The notes beneath the pieces are model-generated. The model searched no databases. It was not told the DNA's origin and was given only the letters and a program-made list of their open reading frames with translations. A stretch of DNA of 64,000 nt from positions 1 through 64,000 of the IMG/VR virus record IMGVR_UViG_3300045999_010033. The stretch is one strand, 5' to 3'. Both the position numbers and the translations under genes were made by a program. Below are positions 6,229 to 46,357 of this stretch, in pieces. Position 1 is the first letter of the stretch, and each line of letters begins with the position of its first letter.

Positions 6229-6265
6229 AAAAAGCGGCCGAACTAATAATATAGTCCGACCGCTT
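6229..6265 (-). terminator. intrinsic terminator
   Basis: AAGCGGTCGG...TCGGCCGCTT hairpin followed by a T-tract on the minus strand. Confidence 0.65.
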
Positions 6266-6574: not shown

Positions 6575-6769
6575 TTAATGTTCTGCCCTATTATAGAATA
6601 GCCGTGGCTCATCGGGCGTAAGGGCCATTGCTTTGTTTCGTTGCATTTTATCGAGGAATGCTACCGCTTCATCCAGATCCATATCTACTGTCACCGGCTG
6701 ATTTGTATCTACTGCGGTGATTGTACAGCGTCCTTTTGAGTCTTGCTTAATATAAAATAGTGTATCCAT
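6575..6769 (-). CDS. hypothetical protein
   Basis: Packed ORF. Confidence 0.55.
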   Translation of the reverse strand: MDTLFYIKQDSKGRCTITAVDTNQPVTVDMDLDEAVAFLDKMQRNKAMALTPDEPRLFYNRAEH

Positions 6770-6772
6770 AGT

Positions 6773-7159
6773 TTAGGCTTTTGCGGGGTTTGCATTGTTA
6801 TCAATCCAATCTTCAACGTCAGCTCTTACTTGGTCAATAACATCATCAAACGAATAGTCGATACTATCTATTTCGATTTGCCTATCGTACCCCATACTCA
6901 ACTCAACTTCTGCCTCTCTTCTAAGGTCTATACGATTAAATTCATCATGCATAACACCAACCAATACATTCAAGAACGCTCCGCGTTTAAACGTTATCAG
7001 CCGATTGTCCTCATCATCTGGTGTTTCTTCTACTACATCTGCGATTTCATCTACCGCCGGCAGATCATCAATACCGTTGATAATCTTCACTACATCTTCC
7101 CGCGTAAAGATAGATGCGGGGCTTACATTTACTAATTCAATTGCGTTTTGCTTTGTCAT
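6773..7159 (-). CDS. acidic hypothetical protein
   Basis: Packed ORF. Confidence 0.6.
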   Translation of the reverse strand: MTKQNAIELVNVSPASIFTREDVVKIINGIDDLPAVDEIADVVEETPDDEDNRLITFKRGAFLNVLVGVMHDEFNRIDLRREAEVELSMGYDRQIEIDSIDYSFDDVIDQVRADVEDWIDNNANPAKA

Positions 7160-7237: not shown

Positions 7238-7483
7238 TTAGTCAGATTCGAACTGCATAGCAACGCCCGCCCAATACTGATGCCCTTCCGGTGTTTTGGC
7301 CCATGTGAACGATTCATTGATAAACGAATAGAACGAATTAAAATCACGATTTAAGTATTCCGATATGATATGGGGTTGGCCATAATCATCCGGCTTTGAC
7401 GATTCCGTTTCACTCAATCGTTTCAGAAACAATACTTGCAGTTTATATGGTATCATCTTCAACCATTCTAGTCCTTTCTTCAT
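7238..7483 (-). CDS. FxWxxTPEGHxYW family paralog 1
   Basis: GLEWL..IPYKLQVLFLKR...FTWAKTPEGHQYW. Confidence 0.85.
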   Translation of the reverse strand: MKKGLEWLKMIPYKLQVLFLKRLSETESSKPDDYGQPHIISEYLNRDFNSFYSFINESFTWAKTPEGHQYWAGVAMQFESD

Positions 7484-7492
7484 ATCTTATAT

Positions 7493-7720
7493 TTATTTAT
7501 ATCTTTCATTCGCGATAAGACTCCAATAATCATGCCCTTCAGCTGTATCTGACCATGTAAACCCTCCACATATAAAATCATGAAACTCTGTAAATTCATA
7601 ATTTAAATATCCAGCGATGCTTTCCAGTCCGATGTACTTCCCGCATTCGGACAATCGTTTCAGAAACAATACTTGCAGTTTATATGGCATTGTTGCCAAC
7701 CATTCTACTCCGGTTTTCAT
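7493..7720 (-). CDS. FxWxxTPEGHxYW family paralog 2
   Basis: FTWSDTAEGHDYW; 36-bp DNA identity with paralog 1. Confidence 0.85.
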   Translation of the reverse strand: MKTGVEWLATMPYKLQVLFLKRLSECGKYIGLESIAGYLNYEFTEFHDFICGGFTWSDTAEGHDYWSLIANERYK

Positions 7721-7941
7721 ATCAATTGCGCATTATATATCTTATTCCAATATTCGTGTCCTTCCGGTGTATCACGCCATACAAACCCGGCATCTATAAA
7801 AGATTCAAACGTGTCAAAATCATAAGATAGAAAGGTAGCTATAGTCCCTTTATCTTTTGGTCGTTTGTGATTAACCCGATTCTTACAAAATAGGATTTGG
7901 TCCTCTTTACTTAATTTACCCAGCCATTCTACCGCTTTCAT
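7717..7941 (-). CDS. FxWxxTPEGHxYW family paralog 3
   Basis: FVWRDTPEGHEYW. Confidence 0.85.
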   Translation of the reverse strand: MKAVEWLGKLSKEDQILFCKNRVNHKRPKDKGTIATFLSYDFDTFESFIDAGFVWRDTPEGHEYWNKIYNAQLI

Positions 7942-7950
7942 ATCTTATAT

Positions 7951-8190
7951 TTATTTATCTTTATGTGCAATCGTATCCCAATAATCGTGCCCTTCGGGGG
8001 TATCTTCCCACATAAATGCATGGTCAATAAACTGACTAAACGAATCATATTCAAGAATCAGATATTGCGCGATTGTCAATCCGCGCTTTGTAACCTCTCC
8101 ACGATTTCTGTGGTTTACTCTATTCTTACAAAATAGGATTTGGTCTTCTTTACTTAATTTACTCAGCCATTCTACTCCTAGCTTTCTCAT
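7951..8190 (-). CDS. FxWxxTPEGHxYW family paralog 4
   Basis: FMWEDTPEGHDYW; N-terminus nearly identical to paralog 3. Confidence 0.85.
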   Translation of the reverse strand: MRKLGVEWLSKLSKEDQILFCKNRVNHRNRGEVTKRGLTIAQYLILEYDSFSQFIDHAFMWEDTPEGHDYWDTIAHKDK

Positions 8191-8212
8191 AATATATGTT
8201 TTTATACTTTAA

Positions 8213-8413
8213 TTAATATCCACATTGTATTGTCAAAGTCCATTGCCGATTGAACCAACCGTAAGATAATATAATCGCTTTAGTATAAACACCAGTTTCC
8301 AAAAAATGGTCTGAATGATATACAAGCTGAATATACGGAAGGATGTGCCATTCATCTCGCTTCCACACCGGCCGGCGGTAACGGCTGAAGCTTATTATAA
8401 TACCATTTTTCAT
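8213..8413 (-). CDS. aromatic-rich hypothetical protein interrupting the array
   Basis: Packed ORF lacking the family motif. Confidence 0.55.
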   Translation of the reverse strand: MKNGIIISFSRYRRPVWKRDEWHILPYIQLVYHSDHFLETGVYTKAIILSYGWFNRQWTLTIQCGY

Positions 8414-8622
8414 ATTCTAAAGATTTCGGCAATATCAAACCAATAATCGCCTCCTTCCGGCGTTGACTCCCAAATGAAATTTCCACTAACAAATTCGCTT
8501 ACATTATCAAATTCGGATGAAAGAATATCGGATATAGTTTTTCCTTGTGAAGCACAGTTCTTCAAAAATTGAACTTGGACTTTATACGATAGCATCTTTA
8601 AACAATCTATACCTTTTATCAT
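8410..8622 (-). CDS. FxWxxTPEGHxYW family paralog 5
   Basis: FIWESTPEGGDYW. Confidence 0.85.
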   Translation of the reverse strand: MIKGIDCLKMLSYKVQVQFLKNCASQGKTISDILSSEFDNVSEFVSGNFIWESTPEGGDYWFDIAEIFRI

Positions 8623-8626
8623 TTTA

Positions 8627-8848
8627 TTAACTATTTAATTTTTGATATTTGCTATGCATTCTAACCCAATATAGATGTCCTTCCGGTGTATCATTCCATC
8701 CGAATCCAGCAATTATAAAATGCGCCACATCATCAAACCCATATAGCAATTTATCCGATATATTGATATCTTGATTGGCCATATTTTTTAATATCTGAAC
8801 TTGCATCTTATATGGTAACTGCAGCAAACAATCTATTCCCTTCATCAT
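8627..8848 (-). CDS. FxWxxTPEGHxYW family paralog 6
   Basis: FGWNDTPEGHLYW. Confidence 0.85.
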   Translation of the reverse strand: MMKGIDCLLQLPYKMQVQILKNMANQDINISDKLLYGFDDVAHFIIAGFGWNDTPEGHLYWVRMHSKYQKLNS

Positions 8849-9099
8849 TATATTCGGTATTTTGATAGTATATCACTCCAATATTGTCGGCCTTCGGGTG
8901 TGCTATTCCAAACGAATCCACGCTTCATAAAGACTTCAAAACTTCGACATTTACTTTGCAAAAAGAAAGAAATGGATCCGACATTATCAAGATTTTTTAA
9001 ATACTTAACCTGTACCGCATATGGTAATTTATTCAGATAATATAATCCGTTTTTCATTTTATATTCATTTTGCAGTCGGAGCGGGACTCGAACCCGCAA
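8848..9099 (-). CDS. FxWxxTPEGHxYW family paralog 7 (true start probably MKNGLYY)
   Basis: FVWNSTPEGRQYW; annotated start runs into the tRNA-like element. Confidence 0.8.
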   Translation of the reverse strand: MRVRVPLRLQNEYKMKNGLYYLNKLPYAVQVKYLKNLDNVGSISFFLQSKCRSFEVFMKRGFVWNSTPEGRQYWSDILSKYRI

Positions 9100-9152
9100 C
9101 GCTAAACCGTATAGGATGAGATGACCGTTTCCTCATTATAAGCTATCCGACC
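9073..9152 (-). ncRNA. tRNA-like RNA without a recognisable anticodon arm
   Basis: Acceptor GGTCGGA/TCCGACT, T-arm GCGGG-TTCGAGT-CCCGC; the middle does not fold as a D/anticodon cloverleaf. Confidence 0.6.
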
Positions 9153-9162
9153 GACCAGCCGA

Positions 9163-9606
9163 TTACTTCAGTAATCCGGCGATTGCTTTCACTTTATCCA
9201 ACTTACTCATTGAGCCGTTTTCGATTGTAGTGAGAGCCTGCCATACCTTAAATTCATTTTCATCGTATTCCGTTACACCGGCTTCATCCATCCAAGCGAT
9301 TACGGCGTTGGCCTCGTCGATTTGGGCTTGATGTTCGGCAATCTCCTTTTGGTAATCTTCCCTAGTGATACCTACTACTTTAGCGTCATATTCTTGGAGC
9401 CAATTACCCTGCCATAATCCATCAAGCGTCTCGGCCGTTAGTACCTTACCTTTAATGGTTTTAACACGATATTTTTCTCCGATGGTATAATTTGCAGATC
9501 CCTCATTTCCAGTTACTACGATAATATCTCCTACTTTTGGCTTCTTACTCATTTTTAATTTGATTTTTAAGTTGTATATAAATTGTTTAATCCGATTTCG
9601 TTTCAT
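9163..9606 (-). CDS. SH3-like + coiled-coil paralog A1
   Basis: KVGDIIVV..YTIGEKYRV...WMDEAGVTEYDENEFKVWQALT. Confidence 0.8.
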   Translation of the reverse strand: MKRNRIKQFIYNLKIKLKMSKKPKVGDIIVVTGNEGSANYTIGEKYRVKTIKGKVLTAETLDGLWQGNWLQEYDAKVVGITREDYQKEIAEHQAQIDEANAVIAWMDEAGVTEYDENEFKVWQALTTIENGSMSKLDKVKAIAGLLK

Positions 9607-9613
9607 AATTCGA

Positions 9614-10036
9614 TTATTTCAAGAGAGCGGCGATGGCCCTTACCTTGTCCATCTTACTCATTGATTCATTTTCAATTGTAGTAAGTGTCTGCCAAACCTT
9701 ATGTTCGTTTTCATCATACACATCCGTACCGGTCTCGTCCATCCAAGCAATAATGGATTGATTGTGCTCAATATCAGTTTTGAGTTTGCTAATCCTTCCG
9801 GTCAGCGTTTGGATTTCGGATTCGATTGCGGCTTTATCTACGGTGCCTGGATCACAATCTTTGTACTTCAGATTATTACCTTTCCATACTCCATCCAAGT
9901 CTCCGGCCATAAATGTGGTGGCGCCGGTATGGGCTAGGACTCGATACCTTTTACCAATAGTATAACTGTGTGAGTTTGAATTAGCCTTTACAAGTACAAT
10001 GTCTCCGACCTGAGGAAGTGCTTTTAACCTTGCCAT
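9614..10036 (-). CDS. SH3-like + coiled-coil paralog A2
   Basis: QVGDIVLV..YTIGKRYRV...WMDETGTDVYDENEHKVWQTLT. Confidence 0.8.
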   Translation of the reverse strand: MARLKALPQVGDIVLVKANSNSHSYTIGKRYRVLAHTGATTFMAGDLDGVWKGNNLKYKDCDPGTVDKAAIESEIQTLTGRISKLKTDIEHNQSIIAWMDETGTDVYDENEHKVWQTLTTIENESMSKMDKVRAIAALLK

Positions 10037-10088
10037 ATTTGTTTTGTTTTATTTATTTAAGTTTTTGTTTTTAATTATAAGAATAGAA

Positions 10089-10487
10089 TTAACCCTTAAT
10101 CATTTGAGCAATTCGTTTCACTTTGTCAATCTTGCTGATATTCTCATCTTCCATAGCCGTCAGCACCTGCCATACCTTAAATTCATCTTCATTGAACACA
10201 TCGGAGCCGGTCATCGACATCCACGCAAGCATACTATGCCTATCTTCAATGAGTGCCTGTGCTTCGGAAATATCCTTCAAAAGTTCATCTTTGGTCATCT
10301 CCCAAATCTCTACCTGCGAAAACTTCAACCATCCACTCTCTGTTCCCGGTACAGCTGCCAATTCAGCTTTCAGAGTATTATCCGACCTATCTATACGTGT
10401 AATACTATATTTTATATCTTTACGATATCCATCCACGGTTGCGATAACTCTAATACATGCTCCGATTTTAACTTGGTCTGCTTTCAT
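10089..10487 (-). CDS. SH3-like + coiled-coil paralog A3
   Basis: KIGACIRV...WMSMTGSDVFNEDEFKVWQVLT. Confidence 0.8.
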   Translation of the reverse strand: MKADQVKIGACIRVIATVDGYRKDIKYSITRIDRSDNTLKAELAAVPGTESGWLKFSQVEIWEMTKDELLKDISEAQALIEDRHSMLAWMSMTGSDVFNEDEFKVWQVLTAMEDENISKIDKVKRIAQMIKG

Positions 10488-10622: not shown

Positions 10623-11210
10623 TTACTCACTATCCGAGTACATAACTTTAGATTCCTTACGGTCGGACTTCGGGCCCAATTCAACATCGGCCAATTCAGC
10701 GGATGCCATTATATCGGCAGTTCCCCGCACTACATCACGCATACCAACGGGAGCGTGTCCTTTGCCGGCGATTGCTTTCACTTCACTAACCAGCTTATCT
10801 GCTTTACGAATGAAGTCACGGGCGGTTTCATCTGAAATAAACATACGCGGTTTATCAACACCCGGTCCAGTCACTTCATACAATTCATAGAAGTCCTTAC
10901 CACCAATATCCGCCGGCAAGTTCAATTCACGAACTACCTTTGTGATTTTGTAACCACGCGGAAGGCGAGAACTTACTGCTTTGGCCGTCGGCTTCTTAAC
11001 CGCCGGCTTTTTAGTGGCCGGCTTTTTAGTAGCAGCCTTTTTAGTTGCCGGTTTCTTAGCCGTAGCATTTTTAGTGGCCGCCTTCTTAGCCGCCGGCTTG
11101 ACCGCCTTCTTCGTAGCAGCCTTTTTAGTGGCCGTCTTTTTGGCCGCAGGTTTGGTAGCCTTCTTTGTAGCGGGCTTTTTAGTAGTCGTTTTTTTCACTG
11201 CTTTACTCAT
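10623..11210 (-). CDS. histone H1-like Lys/Ala/Thr-rich protein with globular C-terminal domain
   Basis: ~80 aa of KKPAT/KKAAT repeats. Confidence 0.8.
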   Translation of the reverse strand: MSKAVKKTTTKKPATKKATKPAAKKTATKKAATKKAVKPAAKKAATKNATAKKPATKKAATKKPATKKPAVKKPTAKAVSSRLPRGYKITKVVRELNLPADIGGKDFYELYEVTGPGVDKPRMFISDETARDFIRKADKLVSEVKAIAGKGHAPVGMRDVVRGTADIMASAELADVELGPKSDRKESKVMYSDSE

Positions 11211-12264: not shown

Positions 12265-12283
12265 ATGTTTTTATTTTTATTTG

Positions 12284-12376
12284 TAGTCAGGACAGGATTC
12301 GAACCTGTACAAAGTTATTTACTATTACCTTTGCCAGCTCGGATGCTGGTGTGTCTACCTATTTCACCACCTGACC
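12284..12376 (-). ncRNA. tRNA-like RNA (Leu-type body, 6-nt non-anticodon loop)
   Basis: GGTCAGG/CCTGACT-A; D arm GTG..GGTAGA-CAC; CCAGC-ATCCGA-GCTGG; long variable arm; ACAGG-TTCGAAT-CCTGT. Confidence 0.8.
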
Positions 12377-15392: not shown

Positions 15393-15950
15393 TTAGTGTA
15401 TTCCGAATCGCTGCTGCCAATAAGGTCGTAACACATTCAGCCCTATCGTATGTTCTAATGTATGCGTTGAGAATGCCGTCATTATATGCGATTTGAATGG
15501 AAGGGGTAGGGCATAGTTAGATGTTGGGTCCAGTTTCGGAATGTATCCATCATCGCTCATCAGTAGATACAGTTCCGATATCAGGGGTAACGGAGTGTCC
15601 AAATGGTGTAGCGGCATATTCCATTCCTTATAAACAGAAGTATGTGGTTGAGCCGCACCGTTGTGTATTCGGTGATGGGAAATGGATAGTCCTGCATAAC
15701 GTGTTCCATCGGAGTAGTAGAATGGTTCTCTGTTCATGTAAAGTTTATACATTACAACAGTTCCAGCTGCGGTTGGTTCGGATTCGAATATTATTATGTA
15801 ATATTGAGCGGCATCGGATTCGTATATCTTTAGATTGACTACCGGTCCTAATATTACATTTATTATGTGTCCTAGTTTATCTATATTATGTATTGTCAAT
15901 CTATTACTCATAAGTTTTTTTATTAGTGTATTCCGAATTGATTTTACCAA
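15393..15950 (-). CDS. LTIxNxxK family paralog (likely start MSNRL)
   Basis: RLTIHNIDKL..YYIIIF..LMSDDGYIP. Confidence 0.75.
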   Translation of the reverse strand: MVKSIRNTLIKKLMSNRLTIHNIDKLGHIINVILGPVVNLKIYESDAAQYYIIIFESEPTAAGTVVMYKLYMNREPFYYSDGTRYAGLSISHHRIHNGAAQPHTSVYKEWNMPLHHLDTPLPLISELYLLMSDDGYIPKLDPTSNYALPLPFKSHIMTAFSTHTLEHTIGLNVLRPYWQQRFGIH

Positions 15951-16351
15951 TAAGATGATAACATTTGTTTACTTATTCTATTTGGTAGGTAATCATCGTG
16001 CTTAACCAGTCTTGCAATCACTTCTGCTAATGGATTGGGTTTGGTTAAAGTAGTTAAGTACATTTTAAATTCTCTTATTTTAGGTAAGGGATTCAATTGG
16101 CCATCCTCAACATTATGTGTAGTGAATCGCATTCTAATATAAGGTTTGCCACTTGGGGATACCAATATGGTCCTTTCTATGTTTAAACTATGTTGCTTTG
16201 CGTATTTACCTTCTGCCGTATATTCGTTAAATGCTATCCAATATCTATCTTGGTCACTTCCGAAAAAAGGTGGTGATATCATGTCACCCATTTTAAAATA
16301 AATGGCACTTACCAATTTATCCATATTATATATGGTCAGCTTTTTACTCAT
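15944..16351 (-). CDS. LTIxNxxK family paralog
   Basis: KLTIYNMDKL..YWIAF..HDDYLP. Confidence 0.75.
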   Translation of the reverse strand: MSKKLTIYNMDKLVSAIYFKMGDMISPPFFGSDQDRYWIAFNEYTAEGKYAKQHSLNIERTILVSPSGKPYIRMRFTTHNVEDGQLNPLPKIREFKMYLTTLTKPNPLAEVIARLVKHDDYLPNRISKQMLSSYW

Positions 16352-16353
16352 AC

Positions 16354-16785
16354 TTATTTAATTACATTTATTAATATGGGATGTTTACGCAAAAAGGATT
16401 TCTTATCGTATTCGATTGATGTTTTGCATTGTGGATAGTAATCATCGTCTATTATCATACTCCATATATCATCAATCAAATCGTATGGATATTTTAGTTT
16501 CAATAAAGCCATAGGCCATCGGTAGTTCAGAATGGGGTTTTGTTCTTTGAATATAGATAAAGTAATATACACACATGGTATCCCATCTATATCGGTCGGT
16601 TCTCTATCAATAGAAAATATATAAACCCGTCCATTTACCTTTTCCATAATAAATGCGTATTCCAACTCAGTCGTTTTTGAACGAATATCTAAAAGTTTGT
16701 CATCATCTTCGAAATAATAGTGCGACATTCCACCTAATATGTTAATCAAATACATTTTATTGTATATGGTTATTTTCTTACTCAT
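16354..16785 (-). CDS. LTIxNxxK family paralog
   Basis: KITIYNKMYL..MIIDDDYYP. Confidence 0.75.
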   Translation of the reverse strand: MSKKITIYNKMYLINILGGMSHYYFEDDDKLLDIRSKTTELEYAFIMEKVNGRVYIFSIDREPTDIDGIPCVYITLSIFKEQNPILNYRWPMALLKLKYPYDLIDDIWSMIIDDDYYPQCKTSIEYDKKSFLRKHPILINVIK

Positions 16786-16789
16786 ATCT

Positions 16790-17227
16790 TTATATTGAAA
16801 AACTATGACTGATATTATTCATTATTGGATTAGTATTGCCCAAATTTACTCTCATCTTCGGAATGTGGTCCTCACGACGCACCATAGTTAGTAAGTTAGC
16901 CGTAATGGGCCAATGGTCTTTTAATGATGGTAAGGCTATAGGGTATGTTCTCCTATTACGAAGTTTTGATAATACATCGGTTGTAGCTAGCTTGATATTG
17001 ATATACTTTATCGGGTGGGATGCCGATGCTGTATCTATTTGTATATTCCGAAATATAAAAAGTTCGTGTTTTTTGATTACAGTTCCCATATCATCTGCCT
17101 CTTCAAAGTATAACCAATAATACGTATCGCATTCGAGGGTACAGGTGTTATTAAACGTTAAAGGAAGTAGTGTCTTACCTTCGTCAAGTATTTTACTTAC
17201 ATTTAATATCGTCAACTTTTTACTCAT
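16790..17227 (-). CDS. LTIxNxxK family paralog
   Basis: KLTILNVSKI..YWLYF..REDHIP. Confidence 0.75.
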   Translation of the reverse strand: MSKKLTILNVSKILDEGKTLLPLTFNNTCTLECDTYYWLYFEEADDMGTVIKKHELFIFRNIQIDTASASHPIKYINIKLATTDVLSKLRNRRTYPIALPSLKDHWPITANLLTMVRREDHIPKMRVNLGNTNPIMNNISHSFSI

Positions 17228-17769
17228 ATATTTTGTGTCAATGAACTATTGGGGTGTATATTTACACTACTCGTAACATTCATACTACCACTTATATTAC
17301 CATAATACGCGGGATTAACTATTTTTTTTGAATACCGCGAGGATACACTCTGTCTTGGTGTAAACGGTCCATTTAGTATTGTTGATATACTAGCAGATGT
17401 ACTCCCACTAAACATGGGTATGAAATTCTCATCATCAATCATTCCCTTTATTACATGTCCCAACACATCGGGGGCATACAATGATTCGATTGGCATTAAC
17501 CAAGTGCGTGGATTTTTAACGGTAAACGCCCGGTCTCTATATTCTAATCGAATTAGACAATTATCAGTATGATCAAATGGGTCTACACGAATTATCCTAT
17601 CTATTATAAGCCACCACTGTCCTAATACTTTATCATCATACGCACTCCAAAACAATTTATACTCATCCGGATAAACAATCACATTACGATTACGTCCATC
17701 TTCGACTGGAATAGTAGGGAATACTTTTTCTAGATTATTTATATTTAGTAACTTATTCATTGGTTTCAA
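17224..17769 (-). CDS. LTIxNxxK family paralog
   Basis: LLNINNLEKV..YKLFW..MIDDENFIP. Confidence 0.75.
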   Translation of the reverse strand: MKPMNKLLNINNLEKVFPTIPVEDGRNRNVIVYPDEYKLFWSAYDDKVLGQWWLIIDRIIRVDPFDHTDNCLIRLEYRDRAFTVKNPRTWLMPIESLYAPDVLGHVIKGMIDDENFIPMFSGSTSASISTILNGPFTPRQSVSSRYSKKIVNPAYYGNISGSMNVTSSVNIHPNSSLTQNI

Positions 17770-17771
17770 AA

Positions 17772-18155
17772 TTAAACTCCACGTGGAATGTAGTCCTCTA
17801 CTCCTGCCATATTTAAAATTTCAGATACCAATCGGACGTAATTCTTTAATTTGGATATGGGTATATTAAATCGACGTGTATGAGCAATCGGATTTGTACT
17901 TCCATCTACGATTTCATTTGTATTGAAACCTATCGTAACACATCGTATCGAATCTGGACTTATATGCTGTATATACCTGCTTATGTTTACTCTACACTCT
18001 TTTATTTTAATCCCATCATTTGTTCGACATTCAAAGTATATCCAATAGAAATCTCTATCTTCTCCGCAATGGAAATTGTAAAAGTTGTCATGTGCATATG
18101 TTCGACAGGCGTGACATGCCTTCTCTATATTATTTATAGTCAATATATTGCTCAT
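17772..18155 (-). CDS. LTIxNxxK family paralog
   Basis: ILTINNIEKA..YWIYF..VEDYIP. Confidence 0.75.
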   Translation of the reverse strand: MSNILTINNIEKACHACRTYAHDNFYNFHCGEDRDFYWIYFECRTNDGIKIKECRVNISRYIQHISPDSIRCVTIGFNTNEIVDGSTNPIAHTRRFNIPISKLKNYVRLVSEILNMAGVEDYIPRGV

Positions 18156-27104: not shown

Positions 27105-28598
27105 TCACTTCAATTTAGAACGAATCTCATCGAAGGTAATCCGATTGTGGAATGTACCATCTTTGTAGATAGTATTCAACGCACCATGTCGTTCTTCTTC
27201 CCAAGATACTTTATCCTTCAGTTCATAGTTTTTATGATGAAGTTTACCCAATGAATCGGATTCCATTACTTCAACTACCTGCAACAAACCAGTAGCAGAT
27301 TTCTTTGTACCATCATCGGTGATAGGGTCTTTGAAGATTTCTCTACCTTCTTCGTTCACTTCAACATAAGTAGCCTTCATAGCGAAACCGAATGTATCGC
27401 GTGTGTTGTACTGATATGTGAATGAACCCACACCGAACACAATGTTAGTCGAAGCGAATCCCTTACTAGCGAGCCTTTGGCAAATTTCCTCAGCCCTCTC
27501 AAGCGTAATAGAGTCACCATAGATTGCTCCAATGTGAGGGTCTAATACTTTGTAACCCTGCTCATTGATTGTACCGCCAAACACATCCCAAAGCAATTCA
27601 ATCACACCTTTATATGAAGGATGTGTTGCTTGTTCCGCCGAGTACATATCAGGCTTTGTGTTTAAACCACACACAATATCGGTAGGATTACCACTATCAG
27701 GTCTGATTACCAATTTACCATCACGTGCCATAATCTTATCTTTCAGTACAACAACGTGCTCCGTACATACTTTCCACAAGTCCCAAGTATCGGATACAAC
27801 CGAAAGGATACCGGTGGGATATGTGTCCAACAATCTACTGAACGTTCCGATTTCATCATCTTTACTACCTGCACACATTACACTATGTTCGGTTGCATTT
27901 ACACTACCAACAACCATACCTTTTGCTCCATAGAATTTGCGAGCACCGTGAATTACTGGAAGACTATCCGACCCCAAGAACGATGTGGCATGTCCAAGAC
28001 CAGAACTGATTGTTACATCAATACTATCAAGACCACGCATTGAGAAGTCATGTGCCTGCCAATCAACAAACCACGCACGTTCCTTGTCCGTTTTATCCTG
28101 CCACTTCGTCAATACTTTACGATATTGATGTGCTATGGTAGCGGATGTCATAGGCTTCCAAAGCAAGTTAGAAATAATAGTTTCCAAATAGTTCGTAATC
28201 CAATAGAAATCGGGGTGAGTATTACGAATGGTCAGAACCGGCACCTTAATAGGAACGGTAGTACCTTCGGTGATTGCTTTCACTTCAATCGGAAGATAAC
28301 CCAAATCGTGCAACCTTTCAAAGTGCGAAACATCATAGTCAGTACCAAGGTAAAGACTCAGTTCCTCTTTGATTTCAGCGATAACTACATCCTTTGGCTG
28401 ACTGAAAAATTCCTTTTCAAAAGCCTCGTGGATTTCCATCATAACCATTTGCTGTCCAAACGATACGACTTCATCACATCCTTTAGGAGCGTGTTTGTTA
28501 CTACGCGGTGTGAAGTTTGAATATACCATAGTCGTACCTTTGGGATATTGTTGATGGTGTCCTGTCTTGTAACCGTCAGTAAGAAGAAGCGGATTCAT
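27105..28598 (-). CDS. nadV: nicotinamide phosphoribosyltransferase family (Nampt; Namat-like)
   Basis: LLTDGYKTGH, HDFSMRG, ATEHSVM, VSDTWD, VIRPDSG, IYGDSI. Confidence 0.93.
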   Translation of the reverse strand: MNPLLLTDGYKTGHHQQYPKGTTMVYSNFTPRSNKHAPKGCDEVVSFGQQMVMMEIHEAFEKEFFSQPKDVVIAEIKEELSLYLGTDYDVSHFERLHDLGYLPIEVKAITEGTTVPIKVPVLTIRNTHPDFYWITNYLETIISNLLWKPMTSATIAHQYRKVLTKWQDKTDKERAWFVDWQAHDFSMRGLDSIDVTISSGLGHATSFLGSDSLPVIHGARKFYGAKGMVVGSVNATEHSVMCAGSKDDEIGTFSRLLDTYPTGILSVVSDTWDLWKVCTEHVVVLKDKIMARDGKLVIRPDSGNPTDIVCGLNTKPDMYSAEQATHPSYKGVIELLWDVFGGTINEQGYKVLDPHIGAIYGDSITLERAEEICQRLASKGFASTNIVFGVGSFTYQYNTRDTFGFAMKATYVEVNEEGREIFKDPITDDGTKKSATGLLQVVEVMESDSLGKLHHKNYELKDKVSWEEERHGALNTIYKDGTFHNRITFDEIRSKLK

Positions 28599-41064: not shown

Positions 41065-42154
41065 TGTTTACAACAAACGGAAAACGAGGTATGCCGTCCG
41101 GCGTTAAATTGAAATACTTTACAGTTGCCTGCTTACCTATGAGCTGTTTTCGGTTCTTCAACATTTCGGCAGTTTCTTCCCACGTTCCCTTTACATTTGA
41201 TTTGAAGCGTTTACCATCTTCCGTTTGGAATACAAAGTACCCAGCAGTTCCTGCTCTATTACCTTCACCCTCACAAATATCAATGATTTGGTATTCTTCA
41301 TCAATAAATGATTTGTGCTTCAATAGGTTCTTACTACGTTTGTTTTCATACTTACCATCCAAACGTAGCATCTGTCCTTCATATCCGGCTTCCACATATT
41401 GACCATACATAGCCATCAGCACTTCTTCGGTTAAGCATACGGTAGTTTCAACTCTAACACAATGCTTTTCAAAGGCATTTTTGAAATCATCAAACAAATC
41501 AACCAAAGTAATAGAACGATTCACAAACACGTCATTTACACTTGGTACATCGTAAATCCAATACTGAATGTTCTTCTCACTTTCTTCTAAATCTTCTTCG
41601 GTTGGTTTGGTTTTCTTCACTAACGAAACAATCTTATTGAAATCGTTGGCGAACTTATCGGCATACAACTCACCATCCAATATCAAATCGGGTTTGTTCT
41701 GAAATAGTTTATCCAATGATTGGCGGATATGTGGTGCGGATATAATCTCTTTACCATTACGGCTGAACATTCCATCCTTTGTAACTATACAGCGAATACC
41801 GTCCAGCTTCGGTTGAGAGTAGATAGGGTATTCGACCTTATCTTTGTAGTCCTCCCATTTTGCGGCCAACATCGGTTCAAAGTATTGCTTCTTATTTATA
41901 TGTTTGATGTTCTCAAAGTAACCACGTTCCAATTTCAATTTACGTTTAGCTTCAGCTTCTTTGAGTGCCTGCTCGTTATCCGTAGTGGCGTTTGCTCGCC
42001 CTTCATTCTTACCATACACTTCTGTCCACTCACTAATTACTTTTTTACCATCGGTTTGGCCTGATATGGTACGATACCGATTCTTTACTACTTCAATAGT
42101 CCACTCCTGCACCTTACCGCCCTTCGTGGATTTGTAAATTGTTTCTAACTTCAT
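41042..42154 (-). CDS. lig: ATP-dependent DNA ligase
   Basis: EPMLA, QPKLDGIRC (motif I), LDGELY, EGQMLR, LLKHK, C-terminal OB fold (PRFP). Confidence 0.92.
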   Translation of the reverse strand: MKLETIYKSTKGGKVQEWTIEVVKNRYRTISGQTDGKKVISEWTEVYGKNEGRANATTDNEQALKEAEAKRKLKLERGYFENIKHINKKQYFEPMLAAKWEDYKDKVEYPIYSQPKLDGIRCIVTKDGMFSRNGKEIISAPHIRQSLDKLFQNKPDLILDGELYADKFANDFNKIVSLVKKTKPTEEDLEESEKNIQYWIYDVPSVNDVFVNRSITLVDLFDDFKNAFEKHCVRVETTVCLTEEVLMAMYGQYVEAGYEGQMLRLDGKYENKRSKNLLKHKSFIDEEYQIIDICEGEGNRAGTAGYFVFQTEDGKRFKSNVKGTWEETAEMLKNRKQLIGKQATVKYFNLTPDGIPRFPFVVNIDRNSYE

Positions 42155-42190
42155 ATGTGTCTGTATTATTATAGGCAGAATTATCCCAAA

Positions 42191-42265
42191 CTTTGTTACA
42201 CAAAGATACGTAAAGTTGCCGATATAACCAAATAATTTTGTAACCCATTGAAAATCAATGAGTTA
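42191..42265 (-). promoter_or_regulatory. P4: promoter + hairpin + IHF-consensus site
   Basis: TATCTTTG 42201-08, TTTG 20 nt upstream; CTTTGT-GTA-ACAAAG; AATCAATGAGTTA at 42253. Confidence 0.85.
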
Positions 42266-42313
42266 CACTAAAAAGTAAAGTTATACCTTGACTTTTTGGG
42301 TATAAAAGTAAAG

Positions 42314-42769
42314 TTATACCTTTACCAAATGATCTGCTGCGTATGTGGCTATCGGACCAAGAGACTTGAATCTGCAGCGATATCCCATACCTTCCACAAG
42401 TCCAACGGCTTGACGGAATACTTCATTGGATTTGAATTTGGGATCTGGGTTGATGTCAATATCAATGAATTTCACTTTGGGCAAACCGGCCACTTTCAAT
42501 TCTTCGGCAGCTTCAATCGCATACCAAACTTCATTCAACAATCGAATGGAACGTGTAGGTTCTTTATCAGCTTTCCATCTACGAAAAATGACATGAGCAC
42601 CTTTACCTGGCGTATGCATCGCAACTACGATAGCATAGATTGTTCGGTCGGTAAAGTTTTGTGAGTCGCATCCAATTAGAATATCCACATCGGTATGTTC
42701 TTTAAGGTATTCTTTCATATATGGAACTAACTCGAATTCGTCTTTCTGATAAAGTTTTTTGAATTTCAT
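42314..42769 (-). CDS. RNase H-like YkuK family protein
   Basis: ILIGCDSQ, YAIVV, RLLNEV, DIDINPD, KSN, ADHL. Confidence 0.82.
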   Translation of the reverse strand: MKFKKLYQKDEFELVPYMKEYLKEHTDVDILIGCDSQNFTDRTIYAIVVAMHTPGKGAHVIFRRWKADKEPTRSIRLLNEVWYAIEAAEELKVAGLPKVKFIDIDINPDPKFKSNEVFRQAVGLVEGMGYRCRFKSLGPIATYAADHLVKV

Positions 42770-42828
42770 ACAACACGTTTTTACATTGTTACAAAGTTTT
42801 AAATTTTACATAATACAAATACTAATAG

Positions 42829-42910
42829 TACCCCGAATCGGACTCGAACCGATACGCCTTTCGGCACCGCATCCTAAGTGCGGCGTGACTGCCAATTCCA
42901 CCACCAGGGC
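42829..42910 (-). tRNA. tRNA-Leu(TAG)
   Basis: CCGCA-CTTAGGA-TGCGG, long variable arm, A73. Confidence 0.92.
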
Positions 42911-42917
42911 AATTAAG

Positions 42918-43002
42918 CGGAGAGTGATGGTAACGATCCATCTTGAGTTTTACCCCAGCCTCGGTTTAGCAAACCGGCCCCTTACCTTTCGGGCAACTCT
43001 CC
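42918..43002 (-). tRNA. tRNA-Ser(GCT), atypical T-loop ATCGTTA
   Basis: CCGGT-TTGCTAA-ACCGA; GGAGAGT/ACTCTCC-G. Confidence 0.85.
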
Positions 43003-43006
43003 ATTG

Positions 43007-43087
43007 TACCTCGAATCGGACTCGAACCGATACGTCTTTCGACACTTGATTTTGAGTCAAGCATGTCTACCATTCCATCACCAAGGC
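43007..43087 (-). tRNA. tRNA-Leu(CAA)
   Basis: CTTGA-CTCAAAA-TCAAG. Confidence 0.92.
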
Positions 43088-43197
43088 GAATCCTGCTCTT
43101 TTATCTACAACTTAATGTAGTCGAACATCCAACACTATAACATACGTTTTATAGTTGCTACCATTGGAGGCAGGCAGAATTGAATCTATGTTCACTG

Positions 43198-43357
43198 CTG
43201 ACAGGGTTGGATTCGAACCAACAAACCGAGATTCAGTAACGAGCACATAGTGCTGCAGCATTGTGGTCAACCCATACTCATTACCTATTTCTATATCGGC
43301 GACTGCGAGACGAGCAGCTGTGTTTGCCAAGATATTACATCGTTTCACCACCTGTCA
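43198..43357 (-). ncRNA. 160-nt expanded tRNA-like RNA
   Basis: TGACAGG/CCTGTCA-G; enlarged D loop; GCTGC-TCGTCTC-GCAGT arm; ~75-nt branched arm; GTTGG-TTCGAAT-CCAAC. Confidence 0.8.
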
Positions 43358-43364
43358 ATCTATG

Positions 43365-43447
43365 CGGAGAGGAAGGGAATCGAACCCCCAAGGCTTTTAC
43401 ACCCGACTGTTTTCAAGACAGCGTCCTCGTCCATTCGGACCCTCTCC
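43365..43447 (-). tRNA. tRNA-Ser(TGA)
   Basis: GCTGT-CTTGAAA-ACAGT. Confidence 0.92.
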
Positions 43448-43455
43448 ATTATAAG

Positions 43456-43528
43456 AGCGGAAGGCCGGGTACGATCCGGCAACCTCAGCCTTGGCAAGGC
43501 TGCGCTCTACCAATTGAGCTACTTCCGC
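43456..43528 (-). tRNA. tRNA-Gly(GCC), T-loop ATCGTAC
   Basis: CAGCC-TTGCCAA-GGCTG, U73. Confidence 0.9.
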
Positions 43529-43741
43529 AGTTTCCCCACCTTGAGATTACAGATGAGTAGTTATTTCGGTTTTCTATTTCTTAAAACCCGCGAGGCATCC
43601 CTCATTAAAACAGCCAACACTACTGGGAGAGATTGTGTCAGTCTCTTTATCCCACGATGTCTCACTCTAGCCGCAGACATTCTGCTAACCTATTGTTAAA
43701 TGAGTCTTAGGTCAAAGACTACTGAGTATCTCTTACTCATT
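43529..43741 (-). ncRNA. candidate ~210-nt structured RNA
   Basis: Serial hairpins (TGAGTA/TACTCA, AGTCTT/AAGACT, ATGTCT/AGACAT, TGGGA/TCCCA, GGTTTT/AAAACC) between two tRNAs. Confidence 0.55.
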
Positions 43742-43742
43742 G

Positions 43743-43814
43743 AGCGAGAAGTCGGAATCGAACCGACATATCCAGCTTGGAAGGCTGGAGTAATAACCGT
43801 TATACTATTCTCGC
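43743..43814 (-). tRNA. tRNA-Gly(TCC)
   Basis: CCAGC-CTTCCAA-GCTGG. Confidence 0.9.
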
Positions 43815-43820
43815 AGTTAG

Positions 43821-43894
43821 TGGAGATGGAGGGATTCGAACCCCCGACTTTTAGAATGCAAATCTAACGCTCTAGCCAACTGAGCTACATCCCC
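43821..43894 (-). tRNA. tRNA-Ala(TGC)
   Basis: TTAGA-TTTGCAT-TCTAA; G3-U70. Confidence 0.92.
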
Positions 43895-43933
43895 ATTGAT
43901 TATCGTTCTATGGACGTTTTTAATTTTTAATTA

Positions 43934-44404
43934 TTATAATACTTTTTCTGATTTTAGTTTTGTTTCAAATTTGTCAAATCGGGAATCAATATAAGAACGA
44001 TTTTCATCAATTCTTTTATGAATTTCCGGCTCAACCTGATCATGAACATTTTTCTGAAATTCATCAATACGTTTATGGATTTCACCCGAAACTGAATCAA
44101 TATCGCGATGTACATCAGGTAGTATGTGTTCATACACATCCCTTTTAAATTCATTGAGTTCTCTATTTGTATTTTCAAACATTGAATGCGTGTTTGAATA
44201 CACATCATCGAATCTCTTAACGTGCTTACTTACCATTATATTTGCCCTCACGATGCCGATAACCATACCAATTAGTATGACTGTAGCTATCCCAAGAACA
44301 TAGGCAATATACATTTGTTCCATAGTTTGTTTTCTCCTATATGTCAAAGAACGATAATCGTGCCCCAGGCGGGGGTCGAACCCGCACTCGCTTTCAGCGA
44401 ACAA
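43934..44404 (-). CDS. membrane-anchored coiled-coil protein (true start likely MEQMYIAY, ~44322)
   Basis: TM plus HKRIDE repeats; annotated start lies inside the tRNA-Leu. Confidence 0.65.
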   Translation of the reverse strand: MFAESECGFDPRLGHDYRSLTYRRKQTMEQMYIAYVLGIATVILIGMVIGIVRANIMVSKHVKRFDDVYSNTHSMFENTNRELNEFKRDVYEHILPDVHRDIDSVSGEIHKRIDEFQKNVHDQVEPEIHKRIDENRSYIDSRFDKFETKLKSEKVL

Positions 44405-44471
44405 GATTAACGCCGCGACGTGTTGAAGCTTGCGTTAAGTCTTGCATGTCTACCTATTCCATCACCAGGGC
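44361..44471 (-). tRNA. tRNA-Leu(TAA) with 26-nt anticodon-loop insertion (44409-44434)
   Basis: CAAGA-CT-TAA-[CGCAAGCTTCAACACGTCGCGGCGTT]-AA-TCTTG; Leu-type body. Confidence 0.85.
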
Positions 44472-44526
44472 CCATACCTACCTTAATAGGTATGTTTGTC
44501 TATAATGTAAATATAGTAAAAGTTTT

Positions 44527-45594
44527 TTAATTATCCAAATCTTTCCGAAAAGGTTTTGCGTATTTAGGGCGAATACATTTCCATATAATAGAATCGTAAT
44601 CCCTCCCATCTAACATAGAAAATAATATTGATGCATGATTATAACGGATTGCTTTGATTGCAAACTCTTTTCTGCTCAAATTTTCACTACGAATGATTGA
44701 GAATATTTCCAAATAATCACGTTTAATATTTTCAAATCTAACTACCAAGTCTTTTACGGTATCCTTTACCCACGTATCAAATTCGTCCGGCACTCTTTCC
44801 AATAACTCATTCAAATCACCACCGGTCCGCAACAATTCCCAGATATCTACATTCGAAACATTGGTGATTATCTTATGAAGTCTTACATACTCTTCACCTT
44901 TGATTTTCATTCTCTTCCCACCTTTGAAACGTATTACATAACCTTCGGCATCATTTGAAATCATATCCTTCAACTTAGTGAAGTCAGTAACACCATTGTA
45001 CTTTCTAACAACTCTTACATCGGTAAAAAGTGCTACTGATTTAGTCAAAGTTTCAAATTCAATTTCGTCCAAAGTATCTCTATCATATGCACCCAACAAT
45101 ACCAAACCCTCAAATGGGTAGCGGCAGACTATCCGATTCTCATCATATATGATTTCAAAAAGGTAAGTCCAATTTTTTCTCAATCCAGTTGTAGGATAGT
45201 TTTTCAATATAGATAATCCCTTCAACATTTCAGTTGCCTTAACGGCTTGCTCTGAAACGAATGAACCTCTCGTTGCTACTATCCAATCTCCGTTATAGTA
45301 AAATGCAATTCCTAAAGAACCGTCCATCTTTTCAAAGACTTCAAATGATTCGTTTGGAATTTCACTATTGGATAATTCTTCCATATTGAAAAATTTTGGA
45401 AATGGTTTGGCTACCACAGTGCCTTCATTATCCAAAACCAATCCACGGCAATCCAATGTAACTGCATCCCACAATCGGTCGTATTGGCACGTTCTGCTGT
45501 AATTGTAGATTGATAAAGGTAACGTTGGATGGTCTTGCTTAACTATCAATCCTCGTCCGATATAATCGTTCAATATGTTTAATGGATATTTCAT
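44527..45594 (-). CDS. T4 Rnl1 (RnlA)-family RNA ligase
   Basis: YNY, CRGLVL, PFPKFFN, FEKMDGSLGI, FEII, EGYVI, KIKGEEY. Confidence 0.9.
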   Translation of the reverse strand: MKYPLNILNDYIGRGLIVKQDHPTLPLSIYNYSRTCQYDRLWDAVTLDCRGLVLDNEGTVVAKPFPKFFNMEELSNSEIPNESFEVFEKMDGSLGIAFYYNGDWIVATRGSFVSEQAVKATEMLKGLSILKNYPTTGLRKNWTYLFEIIYDENRIVCRYPFEGLVLLGAYDRDTLDEIEFETLTKSVALFTDVRVVRKYNGVTDFTKLKDMISNDAEGYVIRFKGGKRMKIKGEEYVRLHKIITNVSNVDIWELLRTGGDLNELLERVPDEFDTWVKDTVKDLVVRFENIKRDYLEIFSIIRSENLSRKEFAIKAIRYNHASILFSMLDGRDYDSIIWKCIRPKYAKPFRKDLDN

Positions 45595-45995
45595 AATTTT
45601 ACACTAAAACGTTTCCGCATTTTTTCCAAAGTCTCATCCGGTACACCATGTACGGATTTATTACCATGTCTATTTTCTACAATCAATGATACAACGGTGT
45701 ATCCATAGCTCTTTGCTAACTTCAAATATGGTTCAAGTTCCCTTTCGGTAGTTGCCGTATTGGATACTACAATCTCTTGTCCATACTGAGTCGTTTCACT
45801 CATTTGCATCAATTCCTCAACACGCTTTTGACAATCCAAATGGGCTTCATGCAATTTCGAAGCGTCAAAATTGTAGTTACCGTTTGAATCGTAAAAGTAT
45901 TGGTCTGCCTCAAACACATTATTTGAAAACATATATTTAGCAAATGAGCTTTTACCACTACCGGGTAAACCACGTAATATGATTAATGTTTTCAT
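45591..45995 (-). CDS. P-loop polynucleotide kinase-like protein
   Basis: LRGLPGSGKS, EAD, VSNT, HGVP. Confidence 0.85.
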   Translation of the reverse strand: MKTLIILRGLPGSGKSSFAKYMFSNNVFEADQYFYDSNGNYNFDASKLHEAHLDCQKRVEELMQMSETTQYGQEIVVSNTATTERELEPYLKLAKSYGYTVVSLIVENRHGNKSVHGVPDETLEKMRKRFSVKL

Positions 45996-46009
45996 ATGCT
46001 CTTTTTATA

Positions 46010-46348: not shown

Positions 46349-46357
46349 TTGTGAAAT

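What the first reader, a model, noticed from the sequence alone, without database searches (positions are those of the whole stretch)
7238..9099. Tandem array of seven small FxWxxTPEGHxYW proteins
Seen: seven 70-83 aa paralogs with an N-terminal G(L/V/I)(E/D)(W/C)L..L(P/S)...Q..F helix and a near-invariant C-terminal F-x-W-x-x-T-(P/A)-E-G-x-x-Y-W motif around a variable middle. Recent pairwise duplications are visible in DNA (36 identical bp at ~7416-7451 and ~7653-7688; identical leaders at ~7480 and ~7940). The array lies in the block downstream of P1. Inference: a gene accordion of anti-defence or host-binding proteins with a conserved aromatic pocket, possibly nucleotide-binding.
Basis: partly seen in the sequence, partly recalled or inferred. 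Interest (0 to 1): 0.65.

Follow-up and report, generated by a model that had tools for sequence, protein, structure and literature searches.

The report
Shrinking seven-gene array, unknown phage domain
A 221-kb lake-water phage carries seven tandem genes for small proteins built on one widespread, uncharacterised phage domain whose predicted fold matches no solved structure; related phages carry 4 to 11 copies because the copies recombine with each other, and what the proteins do is still unknown.

Summary
Seven co-oriented minus-strand genes (69-81 aa, window 7238-9057) are paralogs. Each matches the family profile at E about 1e-33, and they share L, Q, K, I, L, F and F-x-W-x-x-T-x-E-G-x-x-Y-W.

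The family is uncharacterised. Pfam, NCBIfam, PADLOC and PDB sequence searches gave nothing. PHROGs matched only unknown-function families. It is large: 1,232 clusters at 50% identity. AlphaFold models are confident (pLDDT 91) yet resemble no solved structure (best Z 2.9-3.1).

The domain occurs as single genes, as independent tandem arrays in other large phages, as 2-7 or more repeats inside one protein, and at the N-terminus of an amidoligase-like protein family.

Syntenic relatives carry 4, 10 and 11 copies. Two window genes are statistically supported chimeras of paralogs that are separate in the 11-copy relative, which exactly explains 11 to 7 by unequal recombination. The paralogs are old, not recent duplicates.

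The array diverges 2-3 times faster than its upstream flank. Positive selection is not significant.

No evidence supports nucleotide binding or anti-defence, and no RNA data exist. My best guess, held weakly, is a diversifying binding scaffold used in host takeover or counter-defence.

The parts
8848..9057 (-). Copy W1 (69 aa, pI 9.8). The true start is the ATG at 9057, not the TTG at 9099.
   Evidence: Orthologs are A1 in L001 and B1 in L003. The TTG extension overlaps the tRNA-like element.
8627..8848 (-). Copy W2 (73 aa). Its start overlaps the W1 stop.
   Evidence: ortholog A2.
8410..8622 (-). Copy W3 (70 aa, pI 4.5).
   Evidence: orthologs A3 and B2.
8213..8413 (-). Unrelated 66-aa gene inside the array. 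Its ATG overlaps the W3 stop (ATGA).
   Evidence: It is not a family member in any frame. A homolog 61% identical sits at the same place in the Bacteroidia-MAG contig L139. It is absent from L001 and L003.
7951..8190 (-). Copy W4 (79 aa), 'LSKEDQILFCKNRVN' subtype. This is the protein that was modelled.
   Evidence: pLDDT 90.8, pTM 0.81; orthologs A4, B3, C2.
7717..7941 (-). Copy W5 (74 aa), a chimera. The first ~152 nt are A5/B4-type and the 3' end is A8/B7-type. The junction lies at about window 7776-7790.
   Evidence: Maximum chi-square 32.1 and 23.7; permutation p = 0.0002.
7493..7720 (-). Copy W6 (75 aa), a chimera. The first ~30-54 nt are A9/B8-type and the rest is A10/B9-type. The junction lies at about window 7657-7691. 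Its start overlaps the W5 stop (ATGA).
   Evidence: Chi-square 26.5 and 21.7; p = 0.0002 to 0.0006.
7238..7483 (-). Copy W7 (81 aa). It carries a patch identical to W6 and B9 that differs from its own orthologs A11 and B10.
7415..7450 (.). 36-nt block identical to 7652-7687, read here as a conversion or homogenisation tract and a substrate for recombination.
   Evidence: Metagenome contigs from other lakes break at 7444-7681.
9073..9152 (-). Conserved tRNA-like element immediately upstream of the array.
   Evidence: Rfam tRNA 25.9 bits, below the gathering score of 29. It is 98% identical in L001 and L003. ARAGORN calls the L001 copy tRNA-Arg(CCT).
6232..6265 (-). Terminator-like hairpin (14-bp stem plus a T run), the first one downstream of the array. 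It probably ends the transcription unit.
   Evidence: No promoter-like or terminator-like site above chance lies inside the array.

Best explanation
SHOWN. The seven genes are real, tightly packed and probably co-transcribed. They are paralogs of a widespread, uncharacterised, phage-associated helical domain of about 65 aa. They sit in a fast-diverging accessory island of a complete 221-kb freshwater phage. The host is possibly in Bacteroidota, on weak evidence.

SHOWN. The array changes size by homologous recombination between paralogs. The window's 7-copy form is an 11-copy-like array that lost four units through an A5::A8 fusion and an A9::A10 fusion.

INFERRED FROM THE MODEL AND THE VARIATION PATTERN. 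The invariant residues (L, Q, K, I, L, F, F-x-W, T-P-E-G, Y-W) form the hydrophobic core and the cap of the last helix. The x positions inside and after the motif, a variable-length loop and the net charge form a diversifying surface.

INFERENCE ONLY. The domain is a modular recognition scaffold, and each paralog binds a different partner. The phage keeps a panel of such binders for host takeover or for neutralising host defence effectors, much as arrays of immunity proteins work elsewhere. The same module is reused as beads on a string in multi-repeat proteins, and as the N-terminal targeting part of an amidoligase-like protein.
For: Real genes and family:
- Profile E about 1e-33 for each copy, and only these seven in the genome.
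- All copies are intact in four syntenic phages.
- Overall pN/pS is 0.56, below 1.
- 1,232 cluster representatives at E <= 1e-3.
- 107 IMG/VR contigs carry the exact motif.

Array dynamics:
- 4, 7, 10 and 11 copies at one syntenic site.
- Chimeras W5 and W6, permutation p <= 0.0006.
- A conversion patch in W7.
- Independent monophyletic expansions in other large phages: 12 copies in L016 on a 266-kb contig, and 3 each in L077 and L013.

Scaffold plus variable surface:
- Confident AF2 model in which the motif spans a short turn and the start of the last helix.
- Ortholog differences pile up at the x positions of W-xx-TPEG-xx-YW-xx and in the loop, while the motif residues never change.
- pI ranges from 4.2 to 9.8.

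Modularity:
- Proteins with 2-7 detected repeats.
- Two-domain fusions in the same subtype order as the array. Their AF2 model is compact, pTM 0.85.
- 41 of 121 representatives of an amidoligase-like family carry one or two N-terminal copies. Three homologs in that family are annotated PF12224.

Accessory or early context:
- Neighbours elsewhere are helicase, primase, methyltransferase and NinB genes.
- The array lies in a divergence hot spot: pN 0.130 against 0.043 and pS 0.233 against 0.102 for the upstream flank.
Against: - There is no direct functional evidence of any kind.
- No RNA run holds the phage.
- No partner is known.
- No match to PADLOC or to any solved anti-defence protein by fold.
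- The excess of nonsynonymous change over the flank is not significant (Fisher p = 0.13). Faster divergence could reflect relaxed constraint or allele exchange rather than an arms race.
- The core-versus-surface assignment rests on secondary structure and conservation only. I had no coordinates to measure burial.
- The heterodimer test of W5 with W6 gave no answer.
- The host assignment rests only on MAG binning and on where the motif occurs.
Confidence: 0.35

Rival explanations
1. One reading: each protein is a small-molecule sponge. The invariant aromatic and polar residues (F, W, T, E, G, Y, W, K, Q) form a pocket that sequesters an immune signalling nucleotide or an NAD derivative.
For: The proteins are small, phage-encoded and rich in invariant aromatics. 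The two-domain fusion is predicted to be compact, and known sponges are oligomers (my own knowledge). The genome also encodes an NAD-salvage enzyme at 27105-28598.
Against: There is no sequence or fold similarity to any solved protein, sponges included. The invariant residues sit where a core and a helix cap are expected. One fixed ligand does not explain 4-11 paralogs with widely different surfaces and pI 4.2-9.8, proteins with 7 or more repeats, or use as an N-terminal module of an enzyme-like protein.
Confidence: 0.1
2. The proteins bind nucleic acid. They would be a lineage-specific expansion of small transcription factors or nucleoid-associated proteins, as proposed for the ~35 zinc-ribbon copies of Bacillus phage G.
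For: There is precedent for such expansions in jumbo phages (PMC7824862). A Lys/Ala-rich histone-H1-like gene lies in the same gene block upstream of the array. In other phages the domain sits in replication and recombination modules. The weak top structural rows include DNA-binding domains, at Z 2-3.
Against: All structural matches are below any meaningful Z. There is no helix-turn-helix signature. Many paralogs are acidic (pI 4.2-5.7), and the long multi-repeat homologs are mostly acidic (median pI 5.3).
Confidence: 0.15
3. The paralogs are subunits of one hetero-oligomeric assembly. They act together rather than as independent binders.
For: Two-domain fusions join the W4/W5 subtype to the W6/W7/W1 subtype in the same order as the array, and the fusion model is compact (pTM 0.85). 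Overlapping stops and starts suggest coupled translation.
Against: Copy number varies from 4 to 11 among close relatives, which fits a fixed complex poorly. The one complex prediction was inconclusive and counts neither way.
Confidence: 0.15
4. The array is decaying or nearly neutral duplicated DNA with no selected function.
For: Pairwise dN/dS is high for phage genes (0.24-2.0, median about 0.46). Copies are lost without obvious harm.
Against: Every copy is intact in four phages. Twelve columns are invariant across 44 sequences. Pooled pN/pS is 0.56, below 1. The family is maintained in over a thousand sequence clusters.
Confidence: 0.05

Closest known systems
PHROG families phrog_16354, 10949, 25460, 20568, 30073 and 38635 (all 'unknown function')
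   Same: They share the C-terminal F-x-W-x-x-T-x-E-G-x-x-Y-W helix-turn-helix segment, with E down to 4e-7 for the window proteins and 2e-13 for relatives. Pseudomonas phage TC6 gp061 carries the motif (hhalign probability 96.6).
   Different: Most matches cover only the last 20-30 residues. The N-terminal G-x-E-W-L...Q..F.K half is specific to the window's clade. None of these families has a name, a structure or a function.
Poly-immunity loci and tandem immunity-domain proteins of polymorphic toxin systems (e.g. SUKH and Imm families; PMC3482391, PMC3113570)
   Same: Both have arrays of small paralogous genes with a conserved scaffold and variable surfaces. In both, the same domain is also fused head to tail in single proteins, and copy number varies between relatives.
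   Different: There is no sequence match to any Imm or SUKH Pfam model. The setting is a lytic-looking jumbo phage, not a toxin locus. No cognate toxin is known. The resemblance is one of architecture only.
Gene accordions and hyperplastic accessory regions of large viruses (poxvirus K3L amplification; T4-type internal-protein loci). Recalled from my own knowledge, not tested here.
   Same: Copy number at one locus changes by recombination between repeats, in a fast-evolving accessory region.
   Different: The units here are old, diverged paralogs with conserved order. They are not fresh identical amplifications. What is documented is a contraction through chimeric genes, and no selective trigger is known.
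Lineage-specific expansion of a zinc ribbon (~35 copies) in Bacillus phage G (PMC7824862)
   Same: A small-domain family is expanded within one jumbo phage, and its function is inferred only.
   Different: The fold is different: no metal ligands and all-helical. The family studied here is also widespread outside one phage.

Membership tests
Any curated family (Pfam-A, NCBIfam, PADLOC) | Profile match at or near the curated cut-off | tested here: not met
   Pfam gave only noise (best E 0.014, 15.6 bits against a cut-off of 25.8). NCBIfam gave noise. PADLOC gave nothing. 55 long homologs gave no consistent Pfam hit.
PHROG unknown-function families (phrog_16354 and related) | Profile match over the family's length | tested here: inconclusive
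   The matches are significant (E 3e-6 to 4e-7 for some copies), but most cover only the C-terminal 20-30 positions. The best is phrog_20568, positions 47-92 of 94, for W4.
Known nucleotide sponges and other solved anti-defence proteins | Shared fold with a solved member | tested here: not met
   Foldseek against PDB: best E 4.3. VIA-align against 48,161 chains: best Z 2.9 for the single domain and 3.1 for the two-domain model. PDB sequence profile search: best full-sequence E 0.012 (OXA-1 beta-lactamase, no stretch passing on its own), judged chance.
Known nucleotide sponges | Binding of a signalling nucleotide | not testable with these tools
   This needs purified protein and ITC, thermal shift or HPLC depletion assays.
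Viral 'gene accordion' | Copy number at one locus differs between close relatives | tested here: met
   4 copies (L139/L116), 7 (window), 10 (L003) and 11 (L001), all between the same flanking genes.
Viral 'gene accordion' | Change driven by recombination between the repeated units | tested here: met
   W5 is an A5::A8 chimera and W6 is an A9::A10 chimera. Maximum chi-square permutation p <= 0.0006 against two independent parent pairs.
Viral 'gene accordion' | Recent amplification of near-identical units under selection | tested here: not met
   Paralogs are 33-59% identical in protein, with dS 0.74 to saturated. Six of the seven window copies have one-to-one orthologs in the relatives; W5 is mosaic. 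Positive selection is not significant.
Amidoligase_2 (PF12224), for the partner domain of the fusion proteins only | Homology of the C-terminal domain to PF12224 members | tested here: inconclusive
   A direct Pfam scan of P0130 and P0137 finds nothing, even at E <= 10. A search with P0137 residues 380-666 retrieves proteins at E about 1e-35 that carry a precomputed PF12224 hit (P0301, P0307, P0309). The link is therefore transitive only.

The most novel reading that the evidence does not exclude
The F-x-W...TPEG...YW module is a previously unrecognised, phage-wide recognition scaffold with a new fold. Phages would diversify it the way cells diversify immunity proteins. Tandem arrays like this one would then be panels of inhibitors, each aimed at a different host defence effector or takeover target, that grow and shrink by unequal recombination as the host repertoire changes.
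Probability: 0.2. Interest if true: 0.8.

Novelty: new variant of a known kind. Interest (0 to 1): 0.5.

Why it matters
More than a thousand sequence clusters of phage proteins share a small domain that no curated library names. Its confident predicted structure matches nothing solved. It repeatedly expands into gene arrays and into internal repeats, and it is attached to an enzyme-like protein. That behaviour is typical of binding modules involved in virus-host conflict.

This locus offers a clean natural series, with 4, 7, 10 and 11 copies and mapped recombination junctions. The series could be used to ask what such arrays are for. If the proteins prove to be inhibitors of host systems, the family would be a sizeable new source of such tools. 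If not, it is still a well-defined candidate for a new domain entry and a new fold.

Tried and rejected
- Curated libraries. Pfam, NCBIfam and PADLOC scans of the seven proteins and their neighbours gave nothing usable.
- PDB searches. The sequence search and four fold searches found no similar solved structure. BFVD returned only uncharacterised phage proteins. The two ESM Atlas searches gave nothing above TM 0.52, and nothing consistent.
- Cultured phages. Megablast of the region found no match. tblastn found only a weak hit to Pseudomonas phage TC6 gp061. P0137 found nothing.
- The search for related loci. The family alignment failed on viral contigs and raised an error on genome contigs. 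I used an exact degenerate DNA pattern instead.
- Fused known domains. Pfam and PHROG scans of 65 long homologs found only the domain itself.
- Amidoligase lead. I recalled from memory that the C-terminal domain of P0130/P0137 looks like an amidoligase. Direct Pfam and PDB scans did not confirm this. Only a transitive link through homologs annotated PF12224 supports it.
- TC6 neighbour. TC6 gp056, which lies next to a glutamine amidotransferase, is not detectably related to that domain. I dropped the idea of a recurrent neighbourhood.
- Spacer ORF. I tested whether the ORF at 8213-8413 is a decayed family copy. It is not.
- Positive selection. The pooled ratio of nonsynonymous to synonymous changes, array against flank, is not significant (p = 0.13). 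W1 against A1 has omega about 2, but on only 22 changes.
- Expression. No RNA run holds the phage.
- Reads from other lakes. They showed only weak joints (sides of 20-23 nt), which I do not interpret.
- Complex prediction of W5 with W6. The tool's verdict was 'no answer', so it counts neither for nor against binding.
- Literature. Searches for the motif and for comparable arrays found no description of this domain. PMC3268129 is not held.
- One search was an empty script.
Full report
**The locus**

The window is the first 64 kb of a 221,095-bp virus record that CheckV rates as complete. Almost all long ORFs lie on the minus strand. The last ~650 nt of the record repeat window positions ~62-711. 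The phage turns up in lake and freshwater metagenomes from 16 studies. No RNA run holds it.

The window also encodes 24 tRNAs and a tmRNA. Other recognisable genes are a nicotinamide phosphoribosyltransferase, two RNA ligases, a DNA ligase and CobS/CobT-like ATPases. No cultured phage is close.

**Checking the observation**

Seven minus-strand ORFs of 69-81 aa lie between 7238 and 9057. In order of transcription I call them:
- W1, 8848-9057
- W2, 8627-8848
- W3, 8410-8622
- W4, 7951-8190
- W5, 7717-7941
- W6, 7493-7720
- W7, 7238-7483

They align with 14 invariant columns, including F-x-W-x-x-T-x-E-G-x-x-Y-W. A six-frame profile search of the whole genome finds these seven places and no others, each at E about 1e-33.

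- The 83-aa reading of the first copy starts at a TTG inside a conserved tRNA-like element at 9073-9152. The ATG at 9057 is the likely start.
- An unrelated 66-aa gene at 8213-8413 sits between W3 and W4. It matches the family profile in no frame. A homolog 61% identical lies at the same position in a related contig, so it is a real gene.

Stops and starts overlap at W1/W2, W3/ORF66 and W5/W6. No promoter-like or terminator-like site inside the array exceeds chance. The first strong hairpin lies downstream at 6232-6265. The genes therefore look co-transcribed.

**What the family is**

No curated library recognises the proteins (Pfam, NCBIfam, PADLOC). PHROGs gives significant hits, mostly confined to the C-terminal motif, to six families of unknown function.

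The word-index search found 45 close relatives, all hypothetical. The exhaustive profile search found 1,232 representatives at E <= 1e-3 and 97 at E <= 1e-10.

An exact degenerate DNA pattern for F-x-W-x-x-T-P-E-G-x-x-Y-W hit 107 IMG/VR contigs. It also hit 29 stretches in the species-genome collection, mostly in Bacteroidota MAGs such as Tidjanibacter, Alistipes, Flavobacterium, Crocinitomix and Puia. A weak member exists in the cultured Pseudomonas phage TC6.

**Structure**

AlphaFold2, run with a 44-sequence alignment, gives a confident model of W4 (pLDDT 90.8, pTM 0.81). It has five short helices and a two-residue bridge. The variable loop has the lowest confidence. In the model, the motif spans a short turn at W-x-x and the first turns of the last helix, with T-P-E-G at the helix start.

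No solved structure resembles it:
- Foldseek against PDB: best E 4.3.
- VIA-align against 48,161 chains: best Z 2.9. This is well below what unrelated helical models usually reach, according to the tool's own note.
- BFVD: only uncharacterised phage proteins.

**Architectures**

Most members in IMG/VR are single genes of 53-135 aa. In the largest lineage of singletons, the neighbours are a DnaB-like helicase, a primase-helicase, DNA methyltransferases, NinB and an endonuclease. That places the gene in the replication and accessory part of the genome.

Tandem arrays recur in other large phages. There are 12 copies on a 266-kb contig (L016), 3 on a 413-kb contig (L077), and 3 each on L013 and L063. 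On a tree, the window's clade and the L013 and L077 sets are each monophyletic, so the expansions are independent.

Many homologs are single proteins with 2-7 detected repeats. P0061 has about eleven by eye. They carry no other recognisable domain.

Close two-domain fusions (P0046-P0050, P0052) join a W4/W5-type domain to a W6/W7/W1-type domain, in the same order as in the array. AlphaFold models one of them as a compact unit (pLDDT 88.7, pTM 0.85). That model also has no known fold.

Finally, 41 of 121 representatives of one protein family carry one or two N-terminal copies. The C-terminal domain of that family is related to proteins annotated PF12224 (Amidoligase_2). The link is transitive, because direct scans fail.

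**Array dynamics**

Three syntenic relatives were recovered:
- L001, a 28-kb NCBI metagenome contig, with 11 copies.
- L003, an ENA contig, with 10 copies.
- The 25.4-kb contig binned with 'Bacteroidia bacterium EUL_036' (L139 plus L116), with 4 copies plus the ORF66 homolog.

On the tree, six of the seven window copies pair with orthologs in L001 and L003, in the same order. W5 groups with the A5/B4 and A8/B7 pairs without resolving between them. A6-A9 (B5-B8) have no counterpart in the window. The paralogs therefore predate these phages.

A sliding-window comparison shows two mosaics:
- W5 follows A5/B4 for about 152 nt and then follows A8/B7.
- W6 follows A9/B8 for about 30-54 nt and then follows A10/B9.

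Maximum chi-square tests against both parent pairs give permutation p of 0.0002-0.0006. An A5::A8 fusion removes three units and an A9::A10 fusion removes one, so 11 becomes 7. Both parents of each chimera exist in two relatives, so deletion in the window's lineage is the simplest reading.

It is a patch in which W7 matches W6 and B9 but differs from its own orthologs A11 and B10. I read it as conversion between neighbouring copies.

Contigs from other lakes carry the same order across 7658-9631 with about 1% differences. They break at the W6/W7 repeat.

**Rates**

Between the window and L001, the array has pN 0.130 and pS 0.233. Four upstream genes have pN 0.043 and pS 0.102. The ratios are 0.56 and 0.42, and the difference is not significant (Fisher p = 0.13). 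The two genes just downstream (6575-7159) are also highly diverged.

The island is therefore a divergence hot spot at both kinds of site. That fits allele exchange or long-standing diversity as well as it fits selection. Within ortholog groups, changes concentrate at the x positions of W-xx-TPEG-xx-YW-xx, in the loop and in the tail, and the motif residues never change. Net charge runs from -7.5 to +6.6.

**Interpretation**

What is shown: a real multigene family, a large uncharacterised domain family, a predicted fold without a solved relative, modular reuse of the domain, and an array that contracts by unequal recombination.

What is inferred: the invariant residues are fold determinants, the variable positions make the working surface, and the module is therefore a binding scaffold. 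That the array is a panel of binders for host takeover or counter-defence is a guess. It rests on the architecture, the accessory context and the analogy with immunity-protein arrays (PMC3482391).

The nucleotide-sponge idea has no support and several features count against it. A nucleic-acid-binding role and a hetero-oligomeric assembly remain open. The single complex prediction gave no answer.

**Novelty and score**

Expansions of small accessory proteins in large phages, and size changes in arrays by recombination, are known kinds of things. The domain itself is uncatalogued beyond PHROG clusters, and it may have a new fold. I rate it a new variant of a known kind, with interest 0.5. The anatomy is solid and the recombination story is clean, but the function is open.

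Noticed in passing
window 9073-9152 (-): A tRNA-like element has a perfect acceptor stem and T arm but an odd D/anticodon region. It scores 25.9 bits against the Rfam tRNA model, below the cut-off of 29. It is 98% identical across three phages whose neighbouring genes are only 61-85% identical. ARAGORN calls the L001 copy tRNA-Arg(CCT), 81 nt.
   Followed up: partly
window 12283-12376 (-): A second unusual tRNA (Rfam 44 bits) carries an insert of about 22 nt after the anticodon arm. ARAGORN cannot name its anticodon.
   Followed up: no
window 8213-8413 (-): A 66-aa gene sits inside the array, unrelated to the family and without any database match. It is conserved (61% identity) at the same spot in the Bacteroidia-MAG contig, but absent from L001 and L003.
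   Followed up: partly
window 9163-10487 (-): A second tandem family lies just upstream: three paralogs of 132-147 aa with no Pfam match. Two of them are 95-97% conserved between the phages. The related contig L139 has only two copies.
   Followed up: partly
window 10623-11210 (-): A 195-aa protein has a Lys/Ala-rich N-terminal half resembling histone H1-like HC2 (Pfam E 3.6e-5, below the cut-off). It may be a phage nucleoid protein.
   Followed up: no
window 6575-7159 (-): The two genes downstream of the array (128 aa and 64 aa) are only 52% and 62% identical to their L001 orthologs. The divergence hot spot therefore extends beyond the array.
   Followed up: partly
window 42828-57994 (-): A block of 23 tRNA genes plus a tmRNA (tag peptide GNTYANAEYAVAA) is interspersed with small ORFs.
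   Followed up: no
G000 148340-157018 (-) and window 15393-18155 (-): The genome holds another seven-member tandem family (proteins of about 230 aa) and a four-member family. Tandem expansion is a general habit of this phage.
   Followed up: no
window ~62-711 and G000 ~220446-221095: The two ends of the record share a direct repeat of about 650 nt. This is either a terminal repeat or the overlap of a circular assembly, although the record is classed as 'linear'.
   Followed up: partly
L003 8511-8777 (+): Copy B2 of the relative carries an internal 13-aa tandem duplication (KDISEMLLSEYDN twice). This is another small-scale repeat event in the array.
   Followed up: no
L141 (Pseudomonas phage TC6, record 41751-48939): The only cultured-phage member found is gp061. 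It lies in a run of small hypothetical genes a few genes away from a putative glutamine amidotransferase.
   Followed up: partly
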